Shown: piece by piece, positions 1 through 41,382 of the stretch
Numbering within the stretch: the first letter of the stretch is position 1
Layout of the letters: each line of letters begins with the position of its first letter
Assembly (NCBI GenBank): GCA_001949185.1
Contig: BDGG01000005.1
Span: 1,061,063 to 1,102,493 of the forward strand
Origin: Ramazzottius varieornatus
Taxonomy: Eukaryota > Animalia > Tardigrada
Direction: 5' to 3'
DNA: 41,431 nucleotides
Notes under the pieces: generated by a model
Seen by the model: the letters and a program-made list of their open reading frames with translations, nothing else
The model's database searches: none
Told to the model about the DNA's origin: nothing
Position numbers and translations under genes: made by a program

Positions 1-647
1 ACGGAGTCGAATTCTGCAGGCGATTACGCAAGGTTGTACGGCTGATCCTGTATATCTTTGCTGCAGAGGCTTGACTCTGGCCGTTCTTTACCTCGTGAAT
101 AGCTGCTTCCAACGACAACTCTTGGTGCACCTGAAACGCTGTTTTCAGCTGAGAACGGACAGCCATCGTGAGAGAGAAATATCGCAGTATGAAAGACCAG
201 AAAATCTGCAGGAAATATCCTTTTGTGAAAACTGGCAATGCAGTACGGCATCACTGCACGTATCGGGAGAGCTATACGTCATGGATTCCATGCTGAGCCA
301 ATGCAACGTTCATGATCGTGCTGTAAACGCAGAAACCGACGACATGACGTGGTGTTCCTGTTTGCAAGCATTTCTGCAAAAAACGACGAACGTGCCCCCT
401 AGCGGCCTTGTCTTGATTTATTTCGCAGGCTTTTTAACATTAGCGGGATGCTCCTGACTTCCAGAGCCTATATCTCCTCATTTTATCTCGTGAATCTCTT
501 CAAACTTAATAGAAGACTCGGCAAAGTTGTCGTTACAACGTATAAACAAGCAGTGGAAGATTCGGTCCAGTGGGCATCGAGAAAAAAGCCTGACCGAATT
601 ACAGTGTGAATCTCACCCTGACATAATTATGGAGTCTTCCTCGTACG
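1..647. repeat. Left copy of a long inverted repeat (cut by the window start); partner at 40736-41382
   Basis: Position x pairs with 41383-x; ORFs 24..254(-) and 41129..41359(+) translate identically, as do 71..457(+) and the matching part of 40926..41417(-); match stops after ...GGAGTCTTCCTCGTACG at 647. Confidence 0.95.
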
Positions 648-12631: not shown

Positions 12632-13271
12632 TTAGCCCATCAGCTTGAAGAAGTTGTAGTACTGAGGACTTGCAGGTATGTTGGCTGATGATAAGTCTTC
12701 TTGGCTGTCTTCCGGTCGATCCGCAGTACTCCAAGCTAAAGGAAAACTGTCGTCGTGGAAAGGATTAGGATGAAAGGGGAGAAATTCGAGGAGGATAAGT
12801 AGGGGAGCATGCTTACGTTGTGGTATCACATACCGTCGAAGCCGATCCCGCTACTGCCCATCCTTTTGTAGTAGAGAGGCTCGGGCTCGTCTAGCATGAG
12901 GTCATCCGACTGGGGAAGTGAACGAGGGGCGAAGAACCAGTTGTTGCGCGGAACGAAAAACTCGCTGGAGCCTGGTTGACCAATCTTGGACACGGGCATG
13001 TCGAAGGGGCTTTCGACAGCATTCGTGGGCCGTGTCACGGCTGGATGCTTGGCGGAAGCGCCAGCTCGTCCGAGAAAGAAGCGCGGGTCAGCAAGGGAGC
13101 GAGGAGCCGCGCTGGCAAAGCGCTCAACCAGCAGGACAAAAACGAGTACCTATGACACCGAAAATTTTGAGGACTTTTGGCCCAGAGTGATCACAGGAAA
13201 TGAGATATCAATAGTAAAAGCACAAGAGAACCTTGAAAATTCATTAACACTTTTAGCACGATCGTTTTCAT
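12632..13271 (-). CDS. Secreted peptide precursor A, ending QYYNFFKLMG-stop (5' exon uncertain)
   Basis: Exon 13149-12834 (VLVFVLLVERFASAAPRSLADPRFFLGR...RNNWFFAPR...LYYKRMGSSGIGFD), phase-1 intron 12833-12736, last exon AWSTADRPEDSQED...FFKLMG; tentative first exon MKTIVLK 13271-13251 with a weak GTGTTA donor. Confidence 0.7.
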
Positions 13272-13800
13272 GTTTGCAGAATACTACCGTCCTCTTTGTG
13301 TATACAGGAATTTTATCGGCTGGTACCGTGTTGCAGAGGCTGGTCCAACCACTAGGCAATTTTCGAAATCTCAAAATTCGGATAATTGGCAGGCCATGAA
13401 CGCCAAATCTCAAAAGGGAGAACTGGTCGTCTTGATTTTCTTCTGACTGCACTGATGACTACAAAATTTATCCCAGGCTCGGCTTCTATAGATAAGACTG
13501 TCCCCAGTGCTCCAGTTTTTTTCTAAGCGAATACCGTGCACGTGTCTCGCGCGAAGAGACGAAACACCAAATTTCATCAAAACCACCCGAAACCGTAGAA
13601 AAAATTTCCAGCGTGCTGGGGTTTTGCTGGCCGCTGGTCGTTGGTGTTGCTTTGGTGAGAAGACCGAGGTACATGCAAACAAAAAGACACAGACCCCGAA
13701 AGACCAAAAGCTAAGACTGGGAGGTGAATAAAACTGAGTGATTGTATACACAAGGAGGACGGTCGTACGCAGGGTGTTAAAAAATATGAGCAGTGGTCAA

Positions 13801-14010
13801 AGTAACTCAGATCTCACGTGGTGAAACTCCAACTTATTGAGAGACGGCGGGCAAGCTCCTTCTTGACTGCTTGACGTTCTCACACCGTTTCACGAAGGTG
13901 ACCAAGTGTGACCAATGCAAACGGTAGCGATGGCGTCAAAAGAGCCAAATCTGAGGTCGCCCGCAATCTCTCAACTAGTTGGATTTTTGCCACGTGAAAT
14001 CTGAATTACT
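13801..14010. repeat. Degenerate foldback of about 210 bp (MITE-like)
   Basis: AGTAACTCAGATCTCACGTGGTGAAACTCCAACTTATTGAGAGACGGCGGGC vs reverse complement of the right arm AGTAATTCAGATTTCACGTGGCAAAAATCCAACTAGTTGAGAGATTGCGGGC; pairing continues inward (ACCGTTT/AAACGGT). Confidence 0.8.
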
Positions 14011-14939
14011 CTGCCTCCGGGCCCATTTTGAGAAGATGAAATCGTTTTCTCGAATTCGAATGGTTTCCGGACGGGTATCTACTTCCTGACGGAAGACAGT
14101 GTTTAGCTGCCTGTTCGACAGAACGAGGTGTCAGCATCGAAAACCTTTCATCAACCGTACGTTTCCCGTTCTAGGTACCGGACCGACCGTTAAGAAGCCG
14201 AAGGACGCTGGTAGAGCCATTGCGATGAGCAAGTCCGGACCGAAGCGGACAAAGTTTCCGTGGAAGTTCCCGGAGGAATGGAGCGGACTTCCCGACGAAA
14301 GAACCCAGTCAACAAGGAAAAGACGTCAAATGAGGTGAGATGGTGGCGAAGATTGGAGATACTCGAGAAAAATTGGGACGGGAGTGGAAGCGGATGTTGC
14401 TTGAAAGGGATAATGAGGTTTACGAGCACGATCGAGCTATCAAGCTTGATAGTTTTGACAAGTTTGGAGCGTTCTCTGATACCTGATCCAAATGGATATG
14501 CTCTGGTGGCAATTGTGGGCTTTTGTTGTTGTTTGAATGGTACACTATCAACTACTAGGGAAGACAATCACCGAGATGCGTCATGTTTGCTGGAAGCAGG
14601 AGACCATTTGTTTAGGGTCGCCAATTGACACGTATAATGACAGGCTATTCAGGCGAAACACGCTCAGCGTGACTTGTAAATGACTAGAGCACTTTTGGAA
14701 GTATACGGAGTTCACGAGTTTTTGTTTGGTGTGAACCCAACGAAAAGGGAGCGCCATGGAGAGAAAAGAGCGTCAAGCTCCGACGATGAATATGATACTT
14801 AGTTTAATGAAGGATCAGTGTTGAGAAAGAAAGGCGGTTGTGGAAAAGGACTGCTCCCTCAGGGCCGTTATCGGCTTCTTCTGTATAAGCTTGACTTCGA
14901 GGTTTGGGGCGTGGGCAAATGAATAGAACCAGATTGTTA

Positions 14940-14996
14940 TTTCCGGTGGCGCAGGTTTTCGCTACGACTGGCTGGAAGTATGCGCCACTTGGGAAA
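14940..14996. repeat. Palindromic dispersed repeat, copy c
   Basis: TTTCCGGTGGCGCA-loop-TGCGCCACTTGGGAAA. Confidence 0.7.
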
Positions 14997-15347
14997 AAGA
15001 ACATTGTTCAACTCAGTTGCCTACGTCCCATTTCATTCCCCTCAGACTCGCTCGAGGCGTGAAGGATGAGTGAATCATGCGTGAAAGCGGGAATGAAAGT
15101 GGTTTTCATGAGTCTCTATTTAATTTTGAGCAAAGGGTGAACGGGCGGCGCTTTCGTACGAGCATATGGCAACAAGGAACAGGCAGCGCATAGCGCTTTA
15201 CGAAGCTTTTGCGAAAAGGTACTTGGAACAATCCAGCTTTAGAACGGATCGTTGTATAAATAGTACGATGATACTAGAGGAAGACAGTGGTATTTGGTAA
15301 GGCATTTCAGTTTATAGAGGAAGATTAGGCGTGGAGTTGTCGGACTA

Positions 15348-18300
15348 TCACGAGCGCTGATCGAGCCACTCAACCATCTGGCGGCACACGTCATCGCCGA
15401 TCCCGTTGGGTTCGTCAAAGACACGGTGTAAGGCATTCGGTACTATCTGCAAGAACAAATATGAGCGTAGTGATACTTGATCAGTCGTTCGTTTCTTCAA
15501 AGTACAACTTCAGAAAGGCCAGAAGCGAAATTGGAGACCGGTAAACAAAACGTGCAAGATAAGTCCGGCACCCGTCCAGCTACTAACGACAAGAGGGTGC
15601 GCCACTTGGGACAACGACCTTGTACGTTTCCTATACACGCACGATGGGTAAGTATGGGACAGTAAAAAGTATGGGACATGTCTTTTCGCTACGACGGTAT
15701 GGGCAGGTGATTCTTACTATCAATATAAGTAAAAACCAGCACTGAAGGCTGCTTTGCTGTACGTACGTGCTGAGTATTACTGTAGGCCAATGAGCTGAAG
15801 ATGTCGATTTATAGCAGCAAATACAGTAGATCTCTTGTTTCGCCGGAACAACCGTACTTTCAACAGTCACAGGAGCATATCATGCCAAACATAGAATCTT
15901 CAGTCACAATAGGACTTGGAATTTGAACAGTCGAGCTGCCTCTCGTAGTCCCATTCTATTCTGGATAGCAAGAAGCGCGTGCTTCAGGGCTTTCTCGGTG
16001 TACCGTCGAGGTCGCTTGGTCTTAAAGGGCTGGGGCAGAAACGATATGAATTCGAGAGCGTCTCTGGCAGAAAGTAAATGAAAAATCCGCAGCCTCGAAG
16101 CGCAAAAGTCAAACAGCTGAATGTCACGGTCCATGACAATTTTCTACGGTTAAATTTCACTGCGTACGTCATATGCTCGATTTTCATTGCTGGCTCGCAT
16201 TCAGGACGTAAATTTGCCGCACTTTCCGCCTGTCCCATACTTTTTACTGTCACATACTTACCCATCGTGCGTGTACCGACCGCGGGGCCCGACCTCCTAA
16301 ATGATATTTTGGGAAATTTGCCGCGAGCTTTCGATCATAGGTTACCCGTGAAGTGCCTTTCGATCATAGGTTTACCCGTCTTCTCGAAGAATTCAGTTTG
16401 TTTTACCGTTTACTGTTTTGTGATTGATGATGGAGCTCACTGAGCTGGAAAGGCTTACCACAATTTTTTTGTCAGGACTGGCAGCCAGCTCCATGATCCT
16501 TTTGATTTCGGCAGCAGGAATCCATGGATCATTGCCGGCTTGAATACATAAGAAGGGCCAATTGACTTTCTTCATCTTCCTGTTCACGTCGTCGACACCC
16601 CGACGAAAGGCGTTCAACCATCCAGCTTTTAATCTTCCTTTGTAAATCAAAGGATCGTCTACATATTTCGCGATCTGTAAAGAAAATTAAAGTTGGGCCA
16701 GAGCCGCGAGAGGGACCAATGGAGAACCGTTGCAAGGTTTAACTCACTCTCCTGCATACAGCATCGTAAGCAGTGACCATGGTGCGTGTGTATGCAGGTG
16801 GGCGAAAACAGTTATATTCTGGTCTGACGACTTCCGTGTTGAGCAGTGGTTACTATCAGGTGCGCATGTACGACTTGCAACTTTTAGAAACCTTCAACTT
16901 CAAAAATTTGTGGTTTTGCTCTCCCTCGTCAGACCGTTCTGAAACTTCTTTCACGTCACTTGACAAACTCTCCTCTATCTACTAATGGTCGAGCGTTTCA
17001 TGCTTTGTGCTTCGTTGATGAACGATAAGTAATTTTTTGGGAGTCGCGCAGAAGGAAAATTTCGAGTGATTTGGAAATCTCAATGTTTCTAGTTTACCCT
17101 GCTTCGCACACAAAAGACAATATCGGTCTTATATGTAGGAGTAAAATGGCCAGCAGAAAATATGCGGGAGGTTGGATTGATTGTTTGCTTTCTGGAGACG
17201 TTTTACTCGAAAGATATCGCTGCTGAAGACGGAAATTGAAAGTGGACAACAACGTGCTGAGGGAGCTGGCCAAATTCGATCCATCCTAAACTATCCTGAA
17301 ACTCTTACGAGGCTTTAGGGTACGTGTCTAAGCTATTACCGGGCATTCACAAGAAAAGGGAAAGACAAGAAATAAGGGAGTTCTGTGCCCCATTTATCCT
17401 GCGCACCTCTGGAAAAAGATGGAAGGTGGAAGAGGTGGAACTGCAAACTCCCTTTTGCAGTCCTTGTAGTCGGGAGCGAGCACTAATATATTAGAAAAAA
17501 GAGCATCCTCAGCGAGAGAGAAAAATTTTCTCGCAAGGGGCTGCAAAAACGCGATCTAAGAGTTCATTTTTTTTCTTCCCTCATGTTCCTACAGTATCGG
17601 CATGGATTCACTACAGGAAGAAAGGCGGAAGTACCTCACTAGTTTAGACATTTGAGTGGTTTAAAAAGTCTGAGATCTGAAGTCAGGAAATTTATTCTAA
17701 AACTTTCCTCCAGAAAGTTGCAATTCATACTTCCGCACCTAATTTTATGACGCATGAGACACTTACAATATCAGGATCTGACGTAATGGCCGCCGCTTTC
17801 AGCTGTATCAGTCCGGCACCAGGGGCTATTTTTGCCATGGTTCTTCCCAGGAATCTCATTGTCGAGTTGTTGAATTTTTTGTCGATGGCCAGCCCCGGAC
17901 TGAGCAAGATGACTCCATCAAACAAGGAAGGAAACTGAAGTCCCGTGCTAACGGCGATAACTCCTCCCTACAATTACATGCACAAAGGTCCCATAAAGTA
18001 TGAATGCGCGCCATGCTATTTCCGGGTCAGAAGGTGACCCGGAATGCTCCCAAGTGTTCGACTTTATTATGGTGGTATGTTGGGCTCGTACCATGGAATG
18101 TCCAATAATAAACATGGGCATGTTGCGGAGCTTGCTTTTGACGCAGGAGACATGACATTCCACATCCCTACAATACTGATCGATGCTGTCGATGTGCGCT
18201 CGCTTTCCGCCCGATCTACCGAAACCCGCTACACAAAATAATTAACAATTAGTTTGACGAGTAAGGAGGCGGAAGTCCTGTCAACAAAATCCAAAAACAG

Positions 18301-18606
18301 CTCACGTACCATGATCATGGCCAAAAACCAGATAATTGTGGTCTAGAAGAGCTCGGGTAACTCTGCCGTAGGTCAGGAGGTATTCGCCGAAACCATGACT
18401 GAGAAAAACAGCTGCCCTGAAGTGAGAAAAAAATTGGGGAGAAATTCTACAAAATTCCGGAACTGATTTGGTGTTGTCAGAATGATAACACGGCCCTACC
18501 GCGGTGTGGAATTGTCTTTTGGGTACCAGTAATAAGAATGAAGTTCTACTCCGGTACAGCTCCGTAATGTGGACTCTTTGGAAGGGACAAGGTCAGTTTC
18601 CTCCAT
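15348..18606 (-). CDS. MGLL: Monoglyceride lipase-like alpha/beta hydrolase, 6 exons
   Basis: SHGFGEY, VFGHDH-AGFGRSGG, GHSM-GG nucleophile elbow, FDGVILLSP, YVDDPLIY, PFLCIQAGND, NALH; Ser/Asp/His triad present. Confidence 0.88.
15561..15625. repeat. Palindromic dispersed repeat, copy d (left arm decayed), abutting the MITE at 15634
   Basis: GGTGCGCCACTTGGGACAACGACCTTGT; loop CCAGCTACTAAC resembles CAGCCAATAAC of copy a. Confidence 0.55.
15634..16275 (-). mobile_element. Non-autonomous pogo-like TIR element with a psq-type HTH relic, in the last lipase intron
   Basis: 43-bp TIRs (42/43) CACGCACGATGGGTAAGTATGGGACAGTAAAAAGTATGGGACA at 15636-15678 and 16231-16273, TA on both sides; internal RRYTEKALKHALLAIQNRMGLREAARLFK resembles HTH_psq of pogo-family transposases. 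Confidence 0.88.
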
Positions 18607-19620
18607 GATGAAAATTATGCAAATTCGATTCTTTTCGAATTGAGTTTCACAAATAGCTCAACGCGACAATCGCCCAATAAGCTGATCGATCGTGGCTTGG
18701 AAATGGAATCGATGGTGTCACATGCCGAGGAGTAGAATGGTTAACCCCAGGAACAGGATGCGGTGATGAGCTTTCAGCTGGAATGAATTCCCGCCGCTAA
18801 AACTTTTCCAGAATGGCTTCCGGTCGAACCCGAAGTTGTCCAAATATCCACACAAATGGTAAGGAATTACCAATTTAAGGACAGATACAGAAAGCTAAGT
18901 GAGGATGACGATAGCACATTTTGTGTGACGTGAGCAACAGACTCTTCACTGTTCGTGCAGAAGCGAGGAACTGGTTATGATCATGGCTTGAGTCACTCGC
19001 TTGGTTGGGTTTTATGTCCGCTAGTCCGCTTAAGAGTACGACGACGTGGCTCATTTATTCATTCAGTTCCACTGTCGGCTGAGAAGCTGATGATCATACG
19101 TTGACAAAAGGCCTCTTCATGTCAAACGGAAGTAGTACGCATGTGCCGCAAATGCCGCATTTCCTTCGCAACCACCAACGGCTGTTTATGTCGACCAAGA
19201 TTATGCCTTGTCTTCGCTCTTTGAGCTTATGGCGTACAAGGTCCCAGAAGTTGGCAGCTGGTGTATCTTGGAGGCTAGCTGATAGCGTTGTGTATCGTGG
19301 AACCAGCTGTGGTAAATATCCGGGTCGTTCGCGGTAAACAGGGTGCTCCAGTTTACATTGCGCCAGAAAGCACACAGTCCTTCGACTTCATAAACGAACG
19401 TTATGTATTCGGAAGGACCTATCCGAAGGGTACGAGTGCGGATATGGCGGCCTTGTACGATGAGGACTTAAAACACGGCTGATTTTTACATGTGGTTTCG
19501 AAACACAATGGCGGAAACCCGGCCACAGGTTACATGAATAGTACCTTCACATGGTACAGCTGGTTCTTTGACATCAGTGGTCAAAACCTACTGAAATTTG
19601 ACTTCGGCAAACGAATTCAC

Positions 19621-19697
19621 CCAGATCGTCAGGTCATGTGGCGCATGTTCTCGGTGTTATCGCCCAAAGGACCGCGCCACTTGGGGAAACGAACTGG
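19621..19697. repeat. Palindromic dispersed repeat, copy e
   Basis: CCAGATCGT...GTGGCGC-loop-GCGCCACTTGGGGAAACGAACTGG; reverse-complemented loop contains TAACACCG as in copy b. Confidence 0.7.
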
Positions 19698-19935
19698 TTG
19701 ACTTCATTTGCTGAGATTCCAAATACAAGTAGGAGAAATTCTTATGCTCCGGTTTGAGCAGTATAGAAATGGCCGGAAAGAACTGCCTTGTTACGCCGCA
19801 AGGATGCTTTGTGTTGCGTTTCGTCCGTGACTAAAGATCGATGCGGAGAAGTTAATCGAGTATGACTTCTGACGTCATGTATGGGTTCGCTGAAGCGGAA
19901 TAAGAATCTGCAGATGAGCGTATTGTATAGAAGTG

Positions 19936-20976
19936 TTAACAGTATAAGAGCCGGAGCTTGTTGATGTCGCCGGATGAGAGACCCGTAGCTTTCCCAACGG
20001 TGACGCCCTCTTTCAGCGGCGTCATGGTAGGAATGGAAGCAGTTTTCGCCCGAAAAAAGCCGTCAGGGTGTGTTAGTGAGTTGTAATCATAGGGCATCTC
20101 CTCAAGTGGCAAGTCCGTCTTGTTTAGCTTGGCAAACAATGGAGCGTCAACTGAAAAAGAATAAAGCCTCTCATGCTTTCAAGCTTACTTGACTACAGAA
20201 GTGTGAAGGACTTTGCATGATGACGTACGTGGTGAGATGTTGTCCCAGTTGACAGTGATGCTGCTGTCCCGATCGGGACGCTGATGCTCGTTGGGGAGAC
20301 CCAGAAGATGCAAGAGCTGGCGTAGCATTTTTTTCCGCTCTAGGCAGAATGGCACCATCAGCTGCATTACTTGAGCTTTGCCTTGACGTCCCGTGGGACC
20401 GGCGCAGCTGCAAGATACAGTTGCAAGTTATGTACAGCTTACAAATTGCACTGCGATGTTAACACTTGATTCGGCAAACAATATATTAATGATTCTTCAA
20501 GTCAGGAAAACAGTAAACAAGGAAGTGATGTCTGATGATATTTGCTTGGGCGCGATCTTACTCAAATCCCGCGCTCAGCTCTACAAAGTCATCTTCCGTG
20601 GTTCGGGGCATAAAATGGATGCAGGAGGCTGCTTCAATTTCTTCCATGGCGTGCAGAATCGTGTTGTTTTTGCTGTCGAAATTCTCTGCAGGCACGTGTC
20701 CCAGATTATGAATACTATAGAGAGCAGATGTGATAACGGGGATTCGAAACGAACTTACGAACTGACTTGGATAGCTTGTAGGGAACCATTGCGTTTGGCC
20801 AGAGACTTGGAATGGTATCCCATCTTCCCACAGCGGTCACTACAATCGGCGAATTGGGAAGATATATCCCCCACATGCTTCAATATCACCACTAAAATGT
20901 ACGAAGCGTTCTTACCGCTGTACGTGAGAGTTAGCAGGAAGACTGATGCCAAAAAGATTGTCCGTGAACTATGCAT
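19936..20976 (-). CDS. Secreted astacin (M12A)-family homologue, predicted catalytically inactive, multi-exon
   Basis: Signal-like MHSSRTIFLASVFLLTLT; LWPNAMVPY; AMEEIEAASCIHFMPRTTEDDFV; RQLLHLLGLPNEHQRPDRD; PYDYNSLTH; GLSSGDINKLRLLYC. Confidence 0.85.
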
Positions 20977-21452
20977 GATTTCCGTAACCAGGACATAGGC
21001 CGGGTAAACAAAATCCGGAAGAGCACTTCCGTTTCAGCTGACCTGTGTTTGACTGCGTGCATGAGCATTGATTCTTCGGAGCAATCTTTTCGTTCTCCAC
21101 GACTTGTCTGCAACGTCTTCTCTGTTATCTTCTTGAAAATGAAAAATACTGGTTTGACAAGTGGGCAATGGCCGCGCTGTTGTGGCTCGAGGCTGCTATT
21201 AACGTCCTCTCTGTGGGGTTCCCGGTTGGCGCCACCTATGCCGCTAGCTTTTCCAGCTTCTTCCAACCTTACTGATTCGGTTTTACGAAAGTTTGCGGTA
21301 CAAATTTTATTCCTCGACAAACCGTAAGAGGTTGCAAAACTTATCATGTTTAGCACTTTCTGTGAGTAGGGTAATATGACTGGCGACACTAGGCAAAAAG
21401 AATTGTACATATAAATTTTAAGAACGTACTGTTGTAGCACACGATGCTGTAA

Positions 21453-22196
21453 CTAGCCCATCAGTTTGAAAAAGCTATATTGATTTTGGTAGTCATCCTC
21501 CCGGCTGTCTTCCGGTTTTTCATCCACAATCTTTGCAGCAGATAGACGAGAAGAAGAGTAGGGTCGGGAATGGAACATAGACGGTGGGGGCGCTACAAAT
21601 GTATGTGAAGTAGAAGCTTGGATAAAGAGTAAACTGATCCGAACATGCCACTAAATTATTTTCAACCCCGAAAATATGATTTCAGCTTTCGAAGTAGTCC
21701 ACAAATTAACTCGATGTTCCACGCGAAACAGTAATTACTAGCTGGCTACACAATTTGTCTGATCGTCCATTTAAAATCTGCGGAACAACCTACCTATGCG
21801 GGTTTGTCGTTGAAGGTTGCCGTCTCCGCCCATCAAGTCGTCGTCAGAATCGTCATAAGGCATACCGAAGCTCGGAGAGATAATGTCACTACTTTCCCCT
21901 CGGTTTCCGTAAGGGAGGAACCACGTTGAAGGCAGCGAGAAGTACATGTTATCTCTCGGTTGAGTGACCACAAAGTCCGAGACTCCTGAACCAGAACTTT
22001 GAGAGACCTGCGAAACGGGATACATCGCAGGTCTCGGCTTGGACGATGGGGAGCGCTGCCCACCGAGCTGCATGCGGTTATTATAAGCCGAACTAGCCGC
22101 GAACCGCATTGGTGAATGCGGTAACGCAGAAGTCTTCCCGAACCAAAGGACTAGCCAGAAAGCAACGGGTAGAAATTTCCCGATGAAAACCGCCAT
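21453..22196 (-). CDS. Secreted peptide precursor B, ending QYSFFKLMG-stop
   Basis: Signal peptide MAVFIGKFLPVAFWLVLWFGKTSA; PSTWFLP motif; acidic spacer; RQTR site; phase-1 intron 21793-21593; last exon APPPSMF...KPEDSREDDYQNQYSFFKLMG. Confidence 0.8.
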
Positions 22197-23334
22197 TGTC
22201 AATGAATTTTAGATTTCTAGAGGATAAAATAGGAAATCCAGCGTCTGAAAATATGAGAAAAGCGCTTTACAGTAGCGGAAAAACAGGATAAGGCTTAGCA
22301 GAGAGAACTGATGGGAAGAGCGTGAGTCAGACGGACTCTTTACCCTGCCAATTATCCGGGGGAGATTATATAGCATTGGCAAAGAGACAGATCCTTCCGG
22401 CAACGTTGGGAGAACGAAGGTTCTAATGTCAAGCCGTGGCTTTGGGACGGTTTTAAGCGGCAGTCAAACATTGGGCTTGTGTGGTGCTGGCATTGACACT
22501 GTAACGGCCTACAAAAGGGAATGAGGGCGGCATTGTTCAAGCAGGCGCCTGGAGTGAGGCTTCAAGGGCATATCAGATGACGTCCCATATGTCGCCTCTT
22601 TTGTCAACCACTTAAAAATATGGATTAAATACGATGGAAGGAGCAGGGAACTTGGGGATGATGCATGGTTAAGTGGCGACAGCTGGGCGAGCGAACCGGA
22701 AGTCCGCGCACGCCGATCTGGCGATCCAATTTCAAGCTCTTCTTTTCGACAATATAGCGGTGCCACCCTTCGGTTCGGCTATCTATCCGTACCGGCAATA
22801 ACTCAGCTTGCAACAAGTCTTTCCGGGATTACCGGGGTTAGCAAACAACGCGTTTCTTAAGCAGCAAGTCACAACATGGACAGACGGCAGTAAAAGACTC
22901 ATAGCGAGCCTGCGTTGGTCCTTTAACGATCATCTGAAATTCGGATACACATTAAATTATCATTTATTAGTCTAATTCGGAAGATTCTGGTTCGTGGTCT
23001 AGACCGAGTATAAAGCCTAGAGTTGCGGAAAAGGCGGTTAAAACATCGTGCAGTACTATGCAAAACCGATTGATAGTGGGTCCTGTTTGTCAAGGCAGGG
23101 TCTGTGTCTTACAAAGTCCAGAGTAATGCGACATTAAATTGCGGTATTAAATTAAACTTATTATTTAACTTGGGACTTCTGTTGTGTCACGGGAACGTAC
23201 TGAAGGATTAGCCGAAGTCCACGGAAATTGCATTGCGGCGGAAGCGAGAGGTCGTCTGGGAATCAAAGAGCACGTATATCAAGAGTAATCAAAGAGTACG
23301 TGCGCATGATCCGACGGCTTTCATTCGAGGGTCT

Positions 23335-23869
23335 TTATCCCAGGACCTTGAGTAACCTTTGGTTCTTGATGGGAGTATAGCGTGGGTGCATTTCATCCAT
23401 GTAGTGCATGTCGACCCTTAGGTTCTTGGCCGACGTACCCATGAAACTCGGGAGCCATTGACTTGATGCACCTGCATAACTTCAAGGTACTTCAGATGGC
23501 TGGAAACGTGGAAATGAATATCTTATGTGAAAGGACAAACGTACCCCGTTTGACGTCATCTTCAATTTCATCGGGCAAAGTGTAGTCGGCCGATGCAGCA
23601 GGCGCTCTTCCGAATGCCATAGGAAATCGCGGCCACTTCTTCAAGTTTGGCAGGAACCAGCTGGTCGGCGATTTGACAAAGGCACTTTTTTCCGTGTTGG
23701 TCGAAGAATGCCCAACTGGATCCGAAGGGTATTCCTCGTAGGAGGAGTATGTGCGTGTTTGCGCCATTGCAGGTGGCACCAGACTCGAGCTCGCCCGAGG
23801 TTCGGCCTTCACCAAGGGTCCACAAACGAGCGCAACCAGCTGGATGCACAAGACCTTCCTGATATCCAT
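23335..23869 (-). CDS. Secreted peptide precursor C, ending KNQRLLKVLG-stop
   Basis: Signal peptide MDIRKVLCIQLVALVCGPLVKA; PTSWFLP motif; KK-WPRFPMAF-GR; acidic spacer; DVKR; phase-1 intron 23544-23472; last exon GASSQWLPSFMG...RLLKVLG. Confidence 0.8.
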
Positions 23870-24673
23870 TGCAAAAGTTTAGAGAAACCAACTATCAAAA
23901 TAAAACGTTTATATCAAACGAGAAACGAAGCAATTAGCTAAACTAGAACGGGTCAACCTCACCCTCGACAGTAAGTCGATCACCACTATATCGAAAACTG
24001 AACGCGGAAACTTTCGCCAAGACTTTTGAGTGGCAAATATCCTGGATAGTGCCTAGTTTTAAGGGGTGAGCGGCGTCCCCAAGTTACCGTGTTTCACTGT
24101 AGATATTTTCAGGTCGCTCTAAATCGGTCGGGAGGCGCTGATGGTCCCAGAGCAAGTATGAACCCGCCCAGGACGAATACTCACCCAAAGTGTGCTGACG
24201 CTACCCATGCTCCCTTATGGATCAAGGAACAGGCGTATGTGTGATGATCCCGGACTCTGGGGGCAATGGGTGCGACAGGAAGGGCGTTGTAGAATCCAAC
24301 GTACCTTTATTTGCGCTGAAGTTAGTTCAAGCTTGCTCAAAGTGGGCATTCATTGTTCTGAGTATTGTTCGGCGGTTCTTCCACCAACGATAATGTCAGC
24401 AAACTATTTTCGATACTCTAGAGTCTCGATGAACGATCACCACAATACGTCGTGACGTCCGGAAAAAAACGATTGACTTCCGCAGACGTCTTTTTATTCC
24501 GCTCTATCCAGACTAGAATCAACAATGCACATTCTATATGTGTTGAATGATGTGGAAAAAGCTTATTAGTGAGCTTTGAAAACTGAACATCAATGGTTAA
24601 AAATAGCATTTCAGAATCGAAAGAAGTACAACGGCATCGATAAAAGCAAGAATAACTTACAGGAGCTGTTGGA

Positions 24674-40735: not shown

Positions 40736-41382
40736 CGTACGAGGAAGACTCCATAATTATGTCAGGGTGAGATTCACACTGTAATTCGGTCAGGCTTTTT
40801 TCTCGATGCCCACTGGACCGAATCTTCCACTGCTTGTTTATACGTTGTAACGACAACTTTGCCGAGTCTTCTATTAAGTTTGAAGAGATTCACGAGATAA
40901 AATGAGGAGATATAGGCTCTGGAAGTCAGGAGCATCCCGCTAATGTTAAAAAGCCTGCGAAATAAATCAAGACAAGGCCGCTAGGGGGCACGTTCGTCGT
41001 TTTTTGCAGAAATGCTTGCAAACAGGAACACCACGTCATGTCGTCGGTTTCTGCGTTTACAGCACGATCATGAACGTTGCATTGGCTCAGCATGGAATCC
41101 ATGACGTATAGCTCTCCCGATACGTGCAGTGATGCCGTACTGCATTGCCAGTTTTCACAAAAGGATATTTCCTGCAGATTTTCTGGTCTTTCATACTGCG
41201 ATATTTCTCTCTCACGATGGCTGTCCGTTCTCAGCTGAAAACAGCGTTTCAGGTGCACCAAGAGTTGTCGTTGGAAGCAGCTATTCACGAGGTAAAGAAC
41301 GGCCAGAGTCAAGCCTCTGCAGCAAAGATATACAGGATCAGCCGTACAACCTTGCGTAATCGCCTGCAGAATTCGACTCCGT
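40736..41382. repeat. Right copy of the long inverted repeat (partner 1-647)
   Basis: Reverse complement of 1-647; 41383-41431 cannot be compared because the left copy is cut by the window. Confidence 0.95.

What the first reader, a model, noticed from the sequence alone, without database searches (positions are those of the whole stretch)
12632..23869. Cluster of three paralogous prohormone-like precursors yielding 42-46 aa amidated peptides (FFKLM-amide / LLKVL-amide)
Seen: three minus-strand genes (12632-13271, 21453-22196, 23335-23869) that the ORF track splits or truncates. They share a signal peptide, a central aromatic motif (NNWFFAP, STWFLP, TSWFLP), an acidic spacer, a basic site (KR, RQTR, KR), a phase-1 intron just after that site, and a terminal Gly before the stop. 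A and B also share PEDSxED and QY(Y)xFFKLMG. Established: basic site plus terminal Gly is the prohormone convertase/PAM amidation signature. Inference: mature peptides of 42, 46 and 44 aa from a lineage-specific peptide hormone family that I cannot assign to a known precursor.
Basis: partly seen in the sequence, partly recalled or inferred. Interest (0 to 1): 0.85.

Follow-up and report, generated by a model that had tools for sequence, protein, structure and literature searches.

The report
Tardigrade trio of hormone-precursor-like genes
Three neighbouring, expressed genes of the tardigrade Ramazzottius varieornatus encode small secreted, unstructured proteins built like peptide-hormone precursors, but their cutting, amidation and signalling role are untested and no relatives were found elsewhere.

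Summary
The window is Ramazzottius varieornatus. The three minus-strand genes are real. A is RvY_10204 (150 aa) and B is RvY_10208 (180 aa). C (153 aa) has RNA support only.

The deposited isoform of A shows its equivalent intron. One correction: A starts at 14220, not 13271, which lies inside a 1,038-nt first intron.

All three have a signal peptide, a W-F-x-P motif, an acidic stretch, a basic site (KR, RQTR, KR) and a Gly-stop end. A and B are clear paralogues. C is a weaker but probable one.

The proteins are predicted disordered, lack cysteines outside C's signal peptide and match no Pfam family. No homologue turned up in about 1.8 billion representative proteins, in metagenomes or elsewhere in this genome. 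These searches missed even paralogue A, so orthologues as divergent as A is from B could be missed too.

A protein language model places A among neuropeptide precursors of many unrelated families. It places B among secreted disordered proteins.

The prohormone reading is plausible (about 0.45) but unproven. This is a candidate orphan peptide-precursor family of moderate interest.

The parts
14188..14220 (-). Gene A (RvY_10204), coding exon 1: ATG at 14220 and the first 11 residues of the signal peptide. The donor GT follows at 14187.
   Evidence: The sequence was read. It matches the N-terminus of the deposited proteins P0003 and P0004.
12834..13149 (-). Gene A, exon 2: the rest of the signal peptide, the NNWFFAP motif (12945-12925), the acidic stretch and KR (12867-12862). 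It ends in phase 1 with the donor GT at 12833.
   Evidence: Identical to P0004.
12632..12735 (-). Gene A, last coding exon: the PEDSQED motif, FFKLMG (12652-12635) and the stop (12634-12632).
   Evidence: An intron-retaining isoform (P0003) lacks this exon.
21794..22196 (-). Gene B (RvY_10208), exon 1: signal peptide, STWFLP (21929-21912), acidic stretch and RQTR (21809-21798).
   Evidence: RNA contigs of runs X1, X5 and X6 cover it.
21593..21793 (-). Gene B intron: 201 nt, GT..AG, phase 1.
   Evidence: Skipped by one contig in each of three runs from three studies (table 5).
21453..21592 (-). Gene B, last coding exon: PEDSRED, FFKLMG (21473-21456) and the stop.
23545..23869 (-). Gene C, exon 1: signal peptide, TSWFLP (23665-23648), a KK site, acidic stretch and KR (23551-23546).
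23472..23544 (-). Gene C intron: 73 nt, GT..AG, phase 1, directly after KR.
   Evidence: Skipped by contigs of four runs from four studies (table 5, read with the cut 2 places to the right).
23335..23471 (-). Gene C, last coding exon, ending LLKVLG (23355-23338) and the stop.
22950..23952 (-). Full extent of the gene C mRNA: 5' end near 23952, poly(A) site near 22950, and a 3' UTR of about 385 nt.
   Evidence: Contigs of run X8 end in cloning-adapter sequence at 23952 and in an oligo(dT) adapter at 22950 (table 7).

Best explanation
Shown: a small family of three same-strand genes spread over about 11.7 kb in Ramazzottius varieornatus. B and C are 1.1 kb apart. A lies 7 kb away, beyond an astacin gene and a hydrolase gene. 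The genes encode 150-180-aa secreted, intrinsically disordered preproproteins.

Inferred mechanism:
1. The signal peptide takes the protein into the secretory pathway.
2. A subtilisin-like proprotein convertase cuts at the conserved basic site that follows the acidic stretch (KR in A and C, RQTR in B).
3. A carboxypeptidase trims the basic residues.
4. The terminal Gly of the released 42-46-aa C-terminal fragment is converted to an amide, giving ends of the form F-F-K-L-M-amide in A and B and L-L-K-V-L-amide in C.
5. This hydrophobic, Lys-centred amidated end is the part that selection keeps. It would be the receptor-contacting end of a signalling peptide.
6. The N-terminal fragment, with its conserved W-F-x-P motif, is a co-released partner or a sorting piece.
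For: - Gene models and expression.
- Hydrophobic N-termini with small residues at positions -1 and -3 of the likely cut.
- Only one dibasic or RxxR site in the body of A and of B. C has two (KK, and KR at the shared position)..
- The A and B basic sites align exactly, 15 residues after a shared DDLM.
- All three end in Gly-stop after a hydrophobic-hydrophobic-K-hydrophobic-hydrophobic motif, with p about 8e-4 for C against A/B.
- 21 of 33 and 8 of 15 identical residues between A and B use different codons. Synonymous sites are therefore well diverged, and the shared motifs are kept by selection rather than by recent duplication.
- PHM-like and convertase P-domain genes are present in the genome.
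- The nearest named clusters to A in the ESM Atlas are almost all neuropeptide precursors (CAPA 0.91, DH31 0.90, galanin 0.89, PDH, PBAN, NPFF, NPY, UTS2B, CCK).
Against: - There is no evidence of cleavage, amidation or the expressing cell type.
- No orthologue was retrieved, so cross-species conservation of the Gly and the basic site is untested.
- The C-terminal fragments of A and B have net charges of -3 and -1 and are proline-rich and weakly amphipathic (helical moment at most 0.32). This is unlike most long peptide hormones.
- B's nearest Atlas clusters are secreted disordered proteins such as casein, PRAP and DUF1373, all scoring below 0.9.
- The Atlas hits for A share no single family, so they support only a class-level likeness.
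- A has an annotated isoform without the C-terminal exon.
- Ile follows B's cut site. This is unfavourable by published cleavage rules that I recall but did not check here.
Confidence: 0.45

Rival explanations
1. The proteins act at full length as secreted, intrinsically disordered proteins, for example as cuticle, eggshell, gut-lumen or adhesive components. On this reading the basic site and the terminal Gly are not processing signals, and the conserved C-terminal motif is a binding or assembly motif.
For: - Predicted disorder: Atlas models have pLDDT 0.40 and 0.50.
- B's nearest clusters are secreted disordered proteins: casein, proline-rich acidic protein, DUF1373, SPACA7.
- The proteins are Ser/Pro/acidic-rich, evolve fast and lack cysteines outside C's signal peptide.
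- A has an isoform without the C-terminal exon.
- Transcripts are assembled in most whole-animal RNA runs, so expression is not very rare.
Against: - It does not explain why the only strongly kept features are one basic site at a fixed position and a Gly-terminated hydrophobic end.
- A's nearest named clusters are neuropeptide precursors.
Confidence: 0.33
2. They are host-defence peptide precursors: an anionic propiece is removed at the basic site and an amidated C-terminal peptide acts on microbial membranes.
For: - The layout of signal peptide, acidic propiece, KR and a Gly-terminated peptide is also that of many antimicrobial peptide precursors (established knowledge).
- C's fragment has net charge +3.
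- Tandem, fast-evolving families are typical of immune effectors.
Against: - The A and B fragments have net charges of -3 and -1.
- The best 18-residue helical hydrophobic moments are only 0.23-0.32 and prolines interrupt the fragments. This is unlike membrane-active helices.
Confidence: 0.07
3. They are very diverged members of an already described neuropeptide family: pyrokinin/CAPA-type, CRF/DH44-type, tachykinin-type or NPY/NPF-type.
For: - Top Atlas cluster for A is 'CAPA peptides-like' at 0.91, with PBAN at 0.87.
- A contains FFVPR and FFAPR, and all three contain W-F-x-P. These recall the W-F-G-P-R-L core of tryptopyrokinins (from memory, a lead only).
- The F-F-x-L-M end recalls substance P.
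- A 42-46-aa amidated peptide at the precursor's end recalls CRF/DH44.
Against: - No Pfam family at E up to 1 for B or for the separate exons of A and C.
- The F-x-P-R motifs are not followed by Gly plus a basic residue, so no PRX-amide can form.
- The tachykinin Gly is replaced by Lys.
- Tardigrade tachykinin and natalisin precursors are reported as other genes (PMC6880623, citing Koziol 2018).
- There is no amphipathic helix.
- The Atlas hits disagree on the family.
Confidence: 0.08
4. They are young orphan genes that are transcribed and translated but have no selected function.
For: No detectable homologue outside this genome.
Against: - Three copies keep the same architecture, motifs and intron phase.
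- Synonymous sites have diverged.
- Splicing is clean in several independent studies.
Confidence: 0.05

Closest known systems
Generic amidated neuropeptide / peptide-hormone precursors of arthropods (e.g. CAPA, DH31, PDH precursors)
   Same: - A small preproprotein with a signal peptide, an acidic spacer, a basic cleavage motif and a peptide ending in a Gly amidation donor.
- These are A's nearest named clusters by protein language-model features.
   Different: - No sequence homology to any of them.
- The predicted product is long (42-46 aa), acidic or neutral in A and B, and proline-rich.
- Nothing about processing or expression site is known.
CRF / insect diuretic hormone 44 family
   Same: One long (about 41-46 aa) amidated peptite-style product at the C-terminal end of the precursor, ending in an aliphatic residue. 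C's end (N-Q-R-L-L-K-V-L) loosely resembles the N-R-x-x-L-x-x-I/V ends of that family, as I recall them.
   Different: - No PF00473 hit at E up to 1.
- No amphipathic helix, with helical moment at most 0.32 and internal prolines.
- No conserved N-terminal S-L-S-I-type motif.
Tachykinins (substance P, ...F-F-G-L-M-amide)
   Same: The predicted end F-F-K-L-M-amide in A and B shares four of five positions with substance P's end.
   Different: - The defining Gly (F-x-G-L-M in deuterostomes, F-x-G-x-R in protostomes) is Lys here.
- The peptide is four times longer, with one copy per precursor.
- Tardigrade tachykinin and natalisin precursors are described as separate genes (PMC6880623).
Secreted disordered proteins of vertebrates (caseins, proline-rich acidic protein, DUF1373)
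   Same: Signal peptide, disorder, and Ser/Pro/acidic composition. These are B's nearest clusters by language-model features.
   Different: The scores are 0.81-0.87, which is chance level for this tool. There is no homology, and these proteins have no conserved basic site plus Gly end.

Membership tests
Amidated peptide-hormone / neuropeptide precursor (functional class) | N-terminal signal peptide | tested here: met
   Each has a hydrophobic core in its first 25 residues (10-residue Kyte-Doolittle means of 2.5-3.4) and small residues before the likely cut. This is a heuristic check; no SignalP was available.
Amidated peptide-hormone / neuropeptide precursor (functional class) | Convertase-type basic cleavage motif flanking the peptide | tested here: met
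   The motifs are KR, RQTR and KR at a position shared by the three genes. This is the only such site in the body of A and of B. Only the motif is shown, not cleavage.
Amidated peptide-hormone / neuropeptide precursor (functional class) | Gly amidation donor at the peptide's C-terminus | tested here: met
   Gly-stop in all three genes. Amidation itself cannot be tested here.
Amidated peptide-hormone / neuropeptide precursor (functional class) | Mature peptide conserved across species | tested here: inconclusive
   No orthologue was retrieved. The searches also failed to report paralogue A when queried with B, so divergent orthologues would be missed. No other tardigrade genome was searchable.
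Amidated peptide-hormone / neuropeptide precursor (functional class) | Expression in neurosecretory or endocrine cells and detection of the processed peptide | not testable with these tools
   Only whole-animal RNA contigs were available.
Tachykinin | C-terminal F-x-G-L-M-amide (deuterostomes) or F-x-G-x-R-amide (protostomes) | tested here: not met
   The ends are F-F-K-L-M-Gly and L-L-K-V-L-Gly, with no Gly at the third position. The signature is taken from PMC6880623.
CRF / DH44 (Pfam PF00473) | Match to the family profile and an amphipathic helical peptide | tested here: not met
   No Pfam hit at E up to 1. Helical moment is at most 0.32, with 3-5 prolines per fragment.
NPY / NPF (Pfam PF00159) | Match to the family profile and a C-terminal R-x-R-F/Y-amide | tested here: not met
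   No Pfam hit, and the ends differ. The P-E-D-S-x-E-D ... Y-Y stretch only loosely recalls the P-G-E-D-A-x-x-E-D ... Y-Y stretch of NPY, as I recall it.
Pyrokinin / CAPA (PRX-amide) | F-x-P-R-[LVI] followed by Gly and a basic site | tested here: not met
   A has FFVPR-N and FFAPR-S with no Gly or basic residue after them. B and C lack the Arg. No PBAN Pfam hit. The Atlas likeness is a lead only.

The most novel reading that the evidence does not exclude
A Ramazzottius-lineage (or tardigrade-specific) family of long C-terminally amidated signalling peptides (...FFKLM-amide and ...LLKVL-amide) with no counterpart among known bilaterian neuropeptide families. It would be produced from three paralogous precursors and act through a still unidentified receptor.
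Probability: 0.3. Interest if true: 0.6.

Novelty: new member of a known kind. Interest (0 to 1): 0.4.

Why it matters
Tardigrade neuroendocrinology is known almost only from homology-based lists of precursors. A lineage-specific peptide family would be missed by that approach. It could be linked to tardigrade-specific physiology such as moulting, osmotic control or entry into dormancy. The three genes give concrete targets, because the predicted peptide ends can be searched for in mass spectra and the genes can be knocked out. If they turn out to be ordinary secreted disordered proteins, the finding adds only three annotated 'hypothetical proteins' with corrected models.

Tried and rejected
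- Full-length B by phmmer against 1.84 billion representative proteins: only itself, plus a spurious bacterial repeat protein (P0002, E=6e-4, repeats of the type F-R-P-S-T-G-T-W-F-I-V-P). I rejected this as compositional.
- Word-indexed searches with B exon 1, B residues 135-180 and A exon 2: only the deposited R. varieornatus proteins.
- JGI metagenome scans with B and with a Y-x-FFKLMG-stop DNA pattern: 25 pattern hits, none with the family's upstream motifs.
- Own-genome searches with B, C exon 1, both exon profiles and two C-terminal patterns: only these three genes. Three other pattern hits (L019-L021) lack the family features. L019 ends Y-R-F-F-K-L-L-G-stop but has no signal peptide, W-F-x-P or acidic motif nearby, so I treat it as chance. 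The reversed-pattern control gave 6 hits per strand.
- Pfam: nothing except a sub-threshold DUF1459 hit.
- Papers: no mention of RvY_10204, RvY_10208 or RvY_10209, or of FFKLM-type peptides. None appeared in the supplements of two R. varieornatus transcriptome papers, and a third paper had no supplementary files held. Koziol 2018 on tardigrade neuropeptide precursors is not held, so I could not check whether it lists these genes.
- No shared non-coding repeats or promoter words among the three genes. The only DNA-level links are the two coding motifs of A and B.
- The antimicrobial-helix and CRF-helix readings are rejected on charge and hydrophobic moment.
- No joined spliced model of gene C was handed to any search tool; its exons were searched apart by reference. 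A and B were searched as their deposited full-length records.


Full report
**Source and gene models**

The first exon of gene B is 100% identical to 'hypothetical protein RvY_10208' of Ramazzottius varieornatus.

I laid Logan contigs of four runs from four studies on 21300-24000. In three of them one contig skips 21593-21793 (201 nt, GT..AG on the minus strand). In all four a contig skips 73 nt of gene C. Read with the cut two places to the right, that is 23472-23544, again GT..AG.

One run's contigs end in cloning-adapter sequence at 23952 and in an oligo(dT) adapter at 22950. This brackets a full-length C mRNA.

Gene A is RvY_10204, with two deposited isoforms:
- P0003 (118 aa) retains that intron and ends GFDGM.

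Both begin MALPASFGFLT. That peptide is encoded at 14220-14188 and is followed by GT. The next exon starts at 13149 after an AG. The rest of A is right. I could not check A with reads because the single read-laying run was used on B and C.

**Shared anatomy**

The proteins are 150, 180 and 153 aa long. Each has:
- a hydrophobic N-terminus with small residues before the likely signal-peptidase cut;
- an aromatic-proline block (NNWFFAP, STWFLP, TSWFLP), preceded by a weaker copy of the same kind;
- an acidic run;
- a basic site (KR, RQTR, KR);
- a phase-1 intron, which splits the codon directly after the site in C, lies one residue after it in B, and lies nine residues after it in A;
- a last exon ending in Gly-stop.

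In A and B the basic sites align exactly, 15 residues after a shared DDLM. Apart from a KK in C, these are the only dibasic or RxxR sites outside the signal peptides. There are no cysteines outside C's signal peptide.

**Is the similarity more than chance?**

- A against B is clearly significant. BLASTP gives E=5e-6 for the last exon. Global alignment scores exceed all 500 shuffles for both exons, with z=6.8 and z=4.1.
- C is much further away. Its first exon gives E=0.012 against B and is reached by 12 and 24 of 500 shuffles against B and A. Its last exon as a whole is not significant.
- C's last six residues (LLKVLG) score 14 against FFKLMG. A random hexapeptide reaches that score with p about 8e-4. 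An N-Q just upstream is shared with B.
- Together with position (1.1 kb upstream of B, same strand), intron phase and layout, I accept C as a probable distant paralogue.
- Among residues identical between A and B, 21 of 33 and 8 of 15 use different codons. The duplication is therefore old at synonymous sites, and the motifs PEDSxED and FFKLMG are maintained by selection.
- FFKLMG-stop occurs only twice in the 55.8-Mb genome. Profile and pattern searches of the genome found no fourth member.

**Relatives elsewhere**

None were found. The following searches gave nothing relevant:
- phmmer of B against 1.84 billion cluster representatives;
- three word-indexed searches;
- two metagenome scans;
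- Pfam.

This absence is weak evidence. The same phmmer search did not report paralogue A, so an orthologue as diverged as A is from B would be missed. The key reference for tardigrade neuropeptide precursors (Koziol 2018) is not held. Held papers do not mention these genes or peptide ends.

**What the proteins look like**

The ESM Atlas holds both deposited proteins. Its models have pLDDT 0.40 for B and 0.50 for A, which indicates disorder.

By language-model features, B's nearest clusters are secreted disordered proteins of vertebrates, all scoring below 0.9. A's nearest named clusters are almost all neuropeptide or hormone precursors of different, unrelated families: CAPA 0.91, DH31 0.90, galanin 0.89, then PDH, PBAN, NPFF, NPY, UTS2B and CCK. 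The tool warns that such scores are only leads and that disagreement among families means no single family is right. I read this as class-level support: A 'looks like' a prohormone. It is not evidence of membership in any family.

The predicted C-terminal fragments have net charges of -3, -1 and +3 and contain 3-5 prolines. Their helical hydrophobic moments are at most 0.32. This argues against CRF-like or antimicrobial amphipathic helices.

The genome carries copper-monooxygenase-domain genes and several proprotein-convertase P-domain genes, so the required enzyme families exist. These hits do not separate the amidating enzyme from its paralogues.

**Mechanism**

The best-supported reading follows the classical prohormone route:
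1. Entry into the secretory pathway.
2. Cleavage at the single conserved basic site.
3. Trimming of the basic residues.
4. Amidation of the Gly-terminated fragment.
5. The conserved hydrophobic, Lys-centred end acts as the active end of a signalling peptide.

The shown steps are the genes, their splicing and transcription, the motifs and their conservation among paralogues, and the disorder. Every processing step, the cell type and the existence of a receptor are inferred. I put this reading at about 0.45.

The main rival (about 0.33) is that these are secreted disordered proteins acting at full length. Minor rivals are host-defence peptides, diverged members of a known family, and functionless orphans.

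**Comparison with known families**

- The layout is that of amidated-peptide precursors.
- The tachykinin signature fails because Lys replaces the defining Gly. Tardigrade tachykinin and natalisin precursors are reported as other genes (PMC6880623).
- CRF/DH44 and NPY/NPF profiles do not match, and their structural hallmarks are absent.
- The F-x-P-R and W-F-x-P motifs recall PRX-amides and tryptopyrokinins. They are not followed by Gly plus a basic site, so that membership also fails.

I file the trio as a new, so far orphan, member of the known kind 'peptide-precursor-like secreted proteins'.

No joined spliced model of gene C was given to any search tool; its exons were searched apart by reference. 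A and B were searched as their deposited records.

**Verdict**

Noticed in passing
window 1-647 and 40736-41382: A perfect (100%) 647-nt inverted repeat has one arm at each end of the window, 40 kb apart. The left arm starts at base 1, so the repeat may be longer. It could be two copies of a mobile element, a recent inverted duplication or an assembly artefact.
   Followed up: partly
window 22950, 23389, 23952 (run X8): Contigs of one 2024 run end in Gateway-type cloning adapter sequences and an oligo(dT) adapter. That run is therefore a cloned cDNA library. It holds gene C at full length but not gene B.
   Followed up: partly
window 12736-12833: Gene A has a deposited intron-retaining isoform (RvY_10204-2, 118 aa) that stops two codons into the intron and lacks the whole C-terminal exon. 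Its abundance is unknown.
   Followed up: partly
window 16390-18200 and 19930-20900, minus strand: An alpha/beta-hydrolase (Hydrolase_4) gene and an astacin metalloprotease gene lie between genes A and B on the same strand. A prenyltransferase-alpha gene and a TRAP-beta gene lie downstream at 25.3-27.2 kb. They would serve as synteny anchors.
   Followed up: partly
runs X21-X24: Four runs of the same species, probably RNA (the run kind is only the tool's guess), hold almost none of the B-C stretch, while 14 others hold about 60% of it. Expression may depend on stage or condition. Run identities are coded, so I could not say which.
   Followed up: no
L019 (G000:C1:8071202-8071222, minus): An open frame ends Y-R-F-F-K-L-L-G-stop, close to the A/B ending, but none of the family's other features are nearby. 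I treat it as a chance match.
   Followed up: partly
window 23641-23610, minus (gene C): Between KK and a Gly-Arg lies W-P-R-F-P-M-A-F. This could in principle be released as a second, short amidated peptide. The flanking sites are not conserved in A or B.
   Followed up: no
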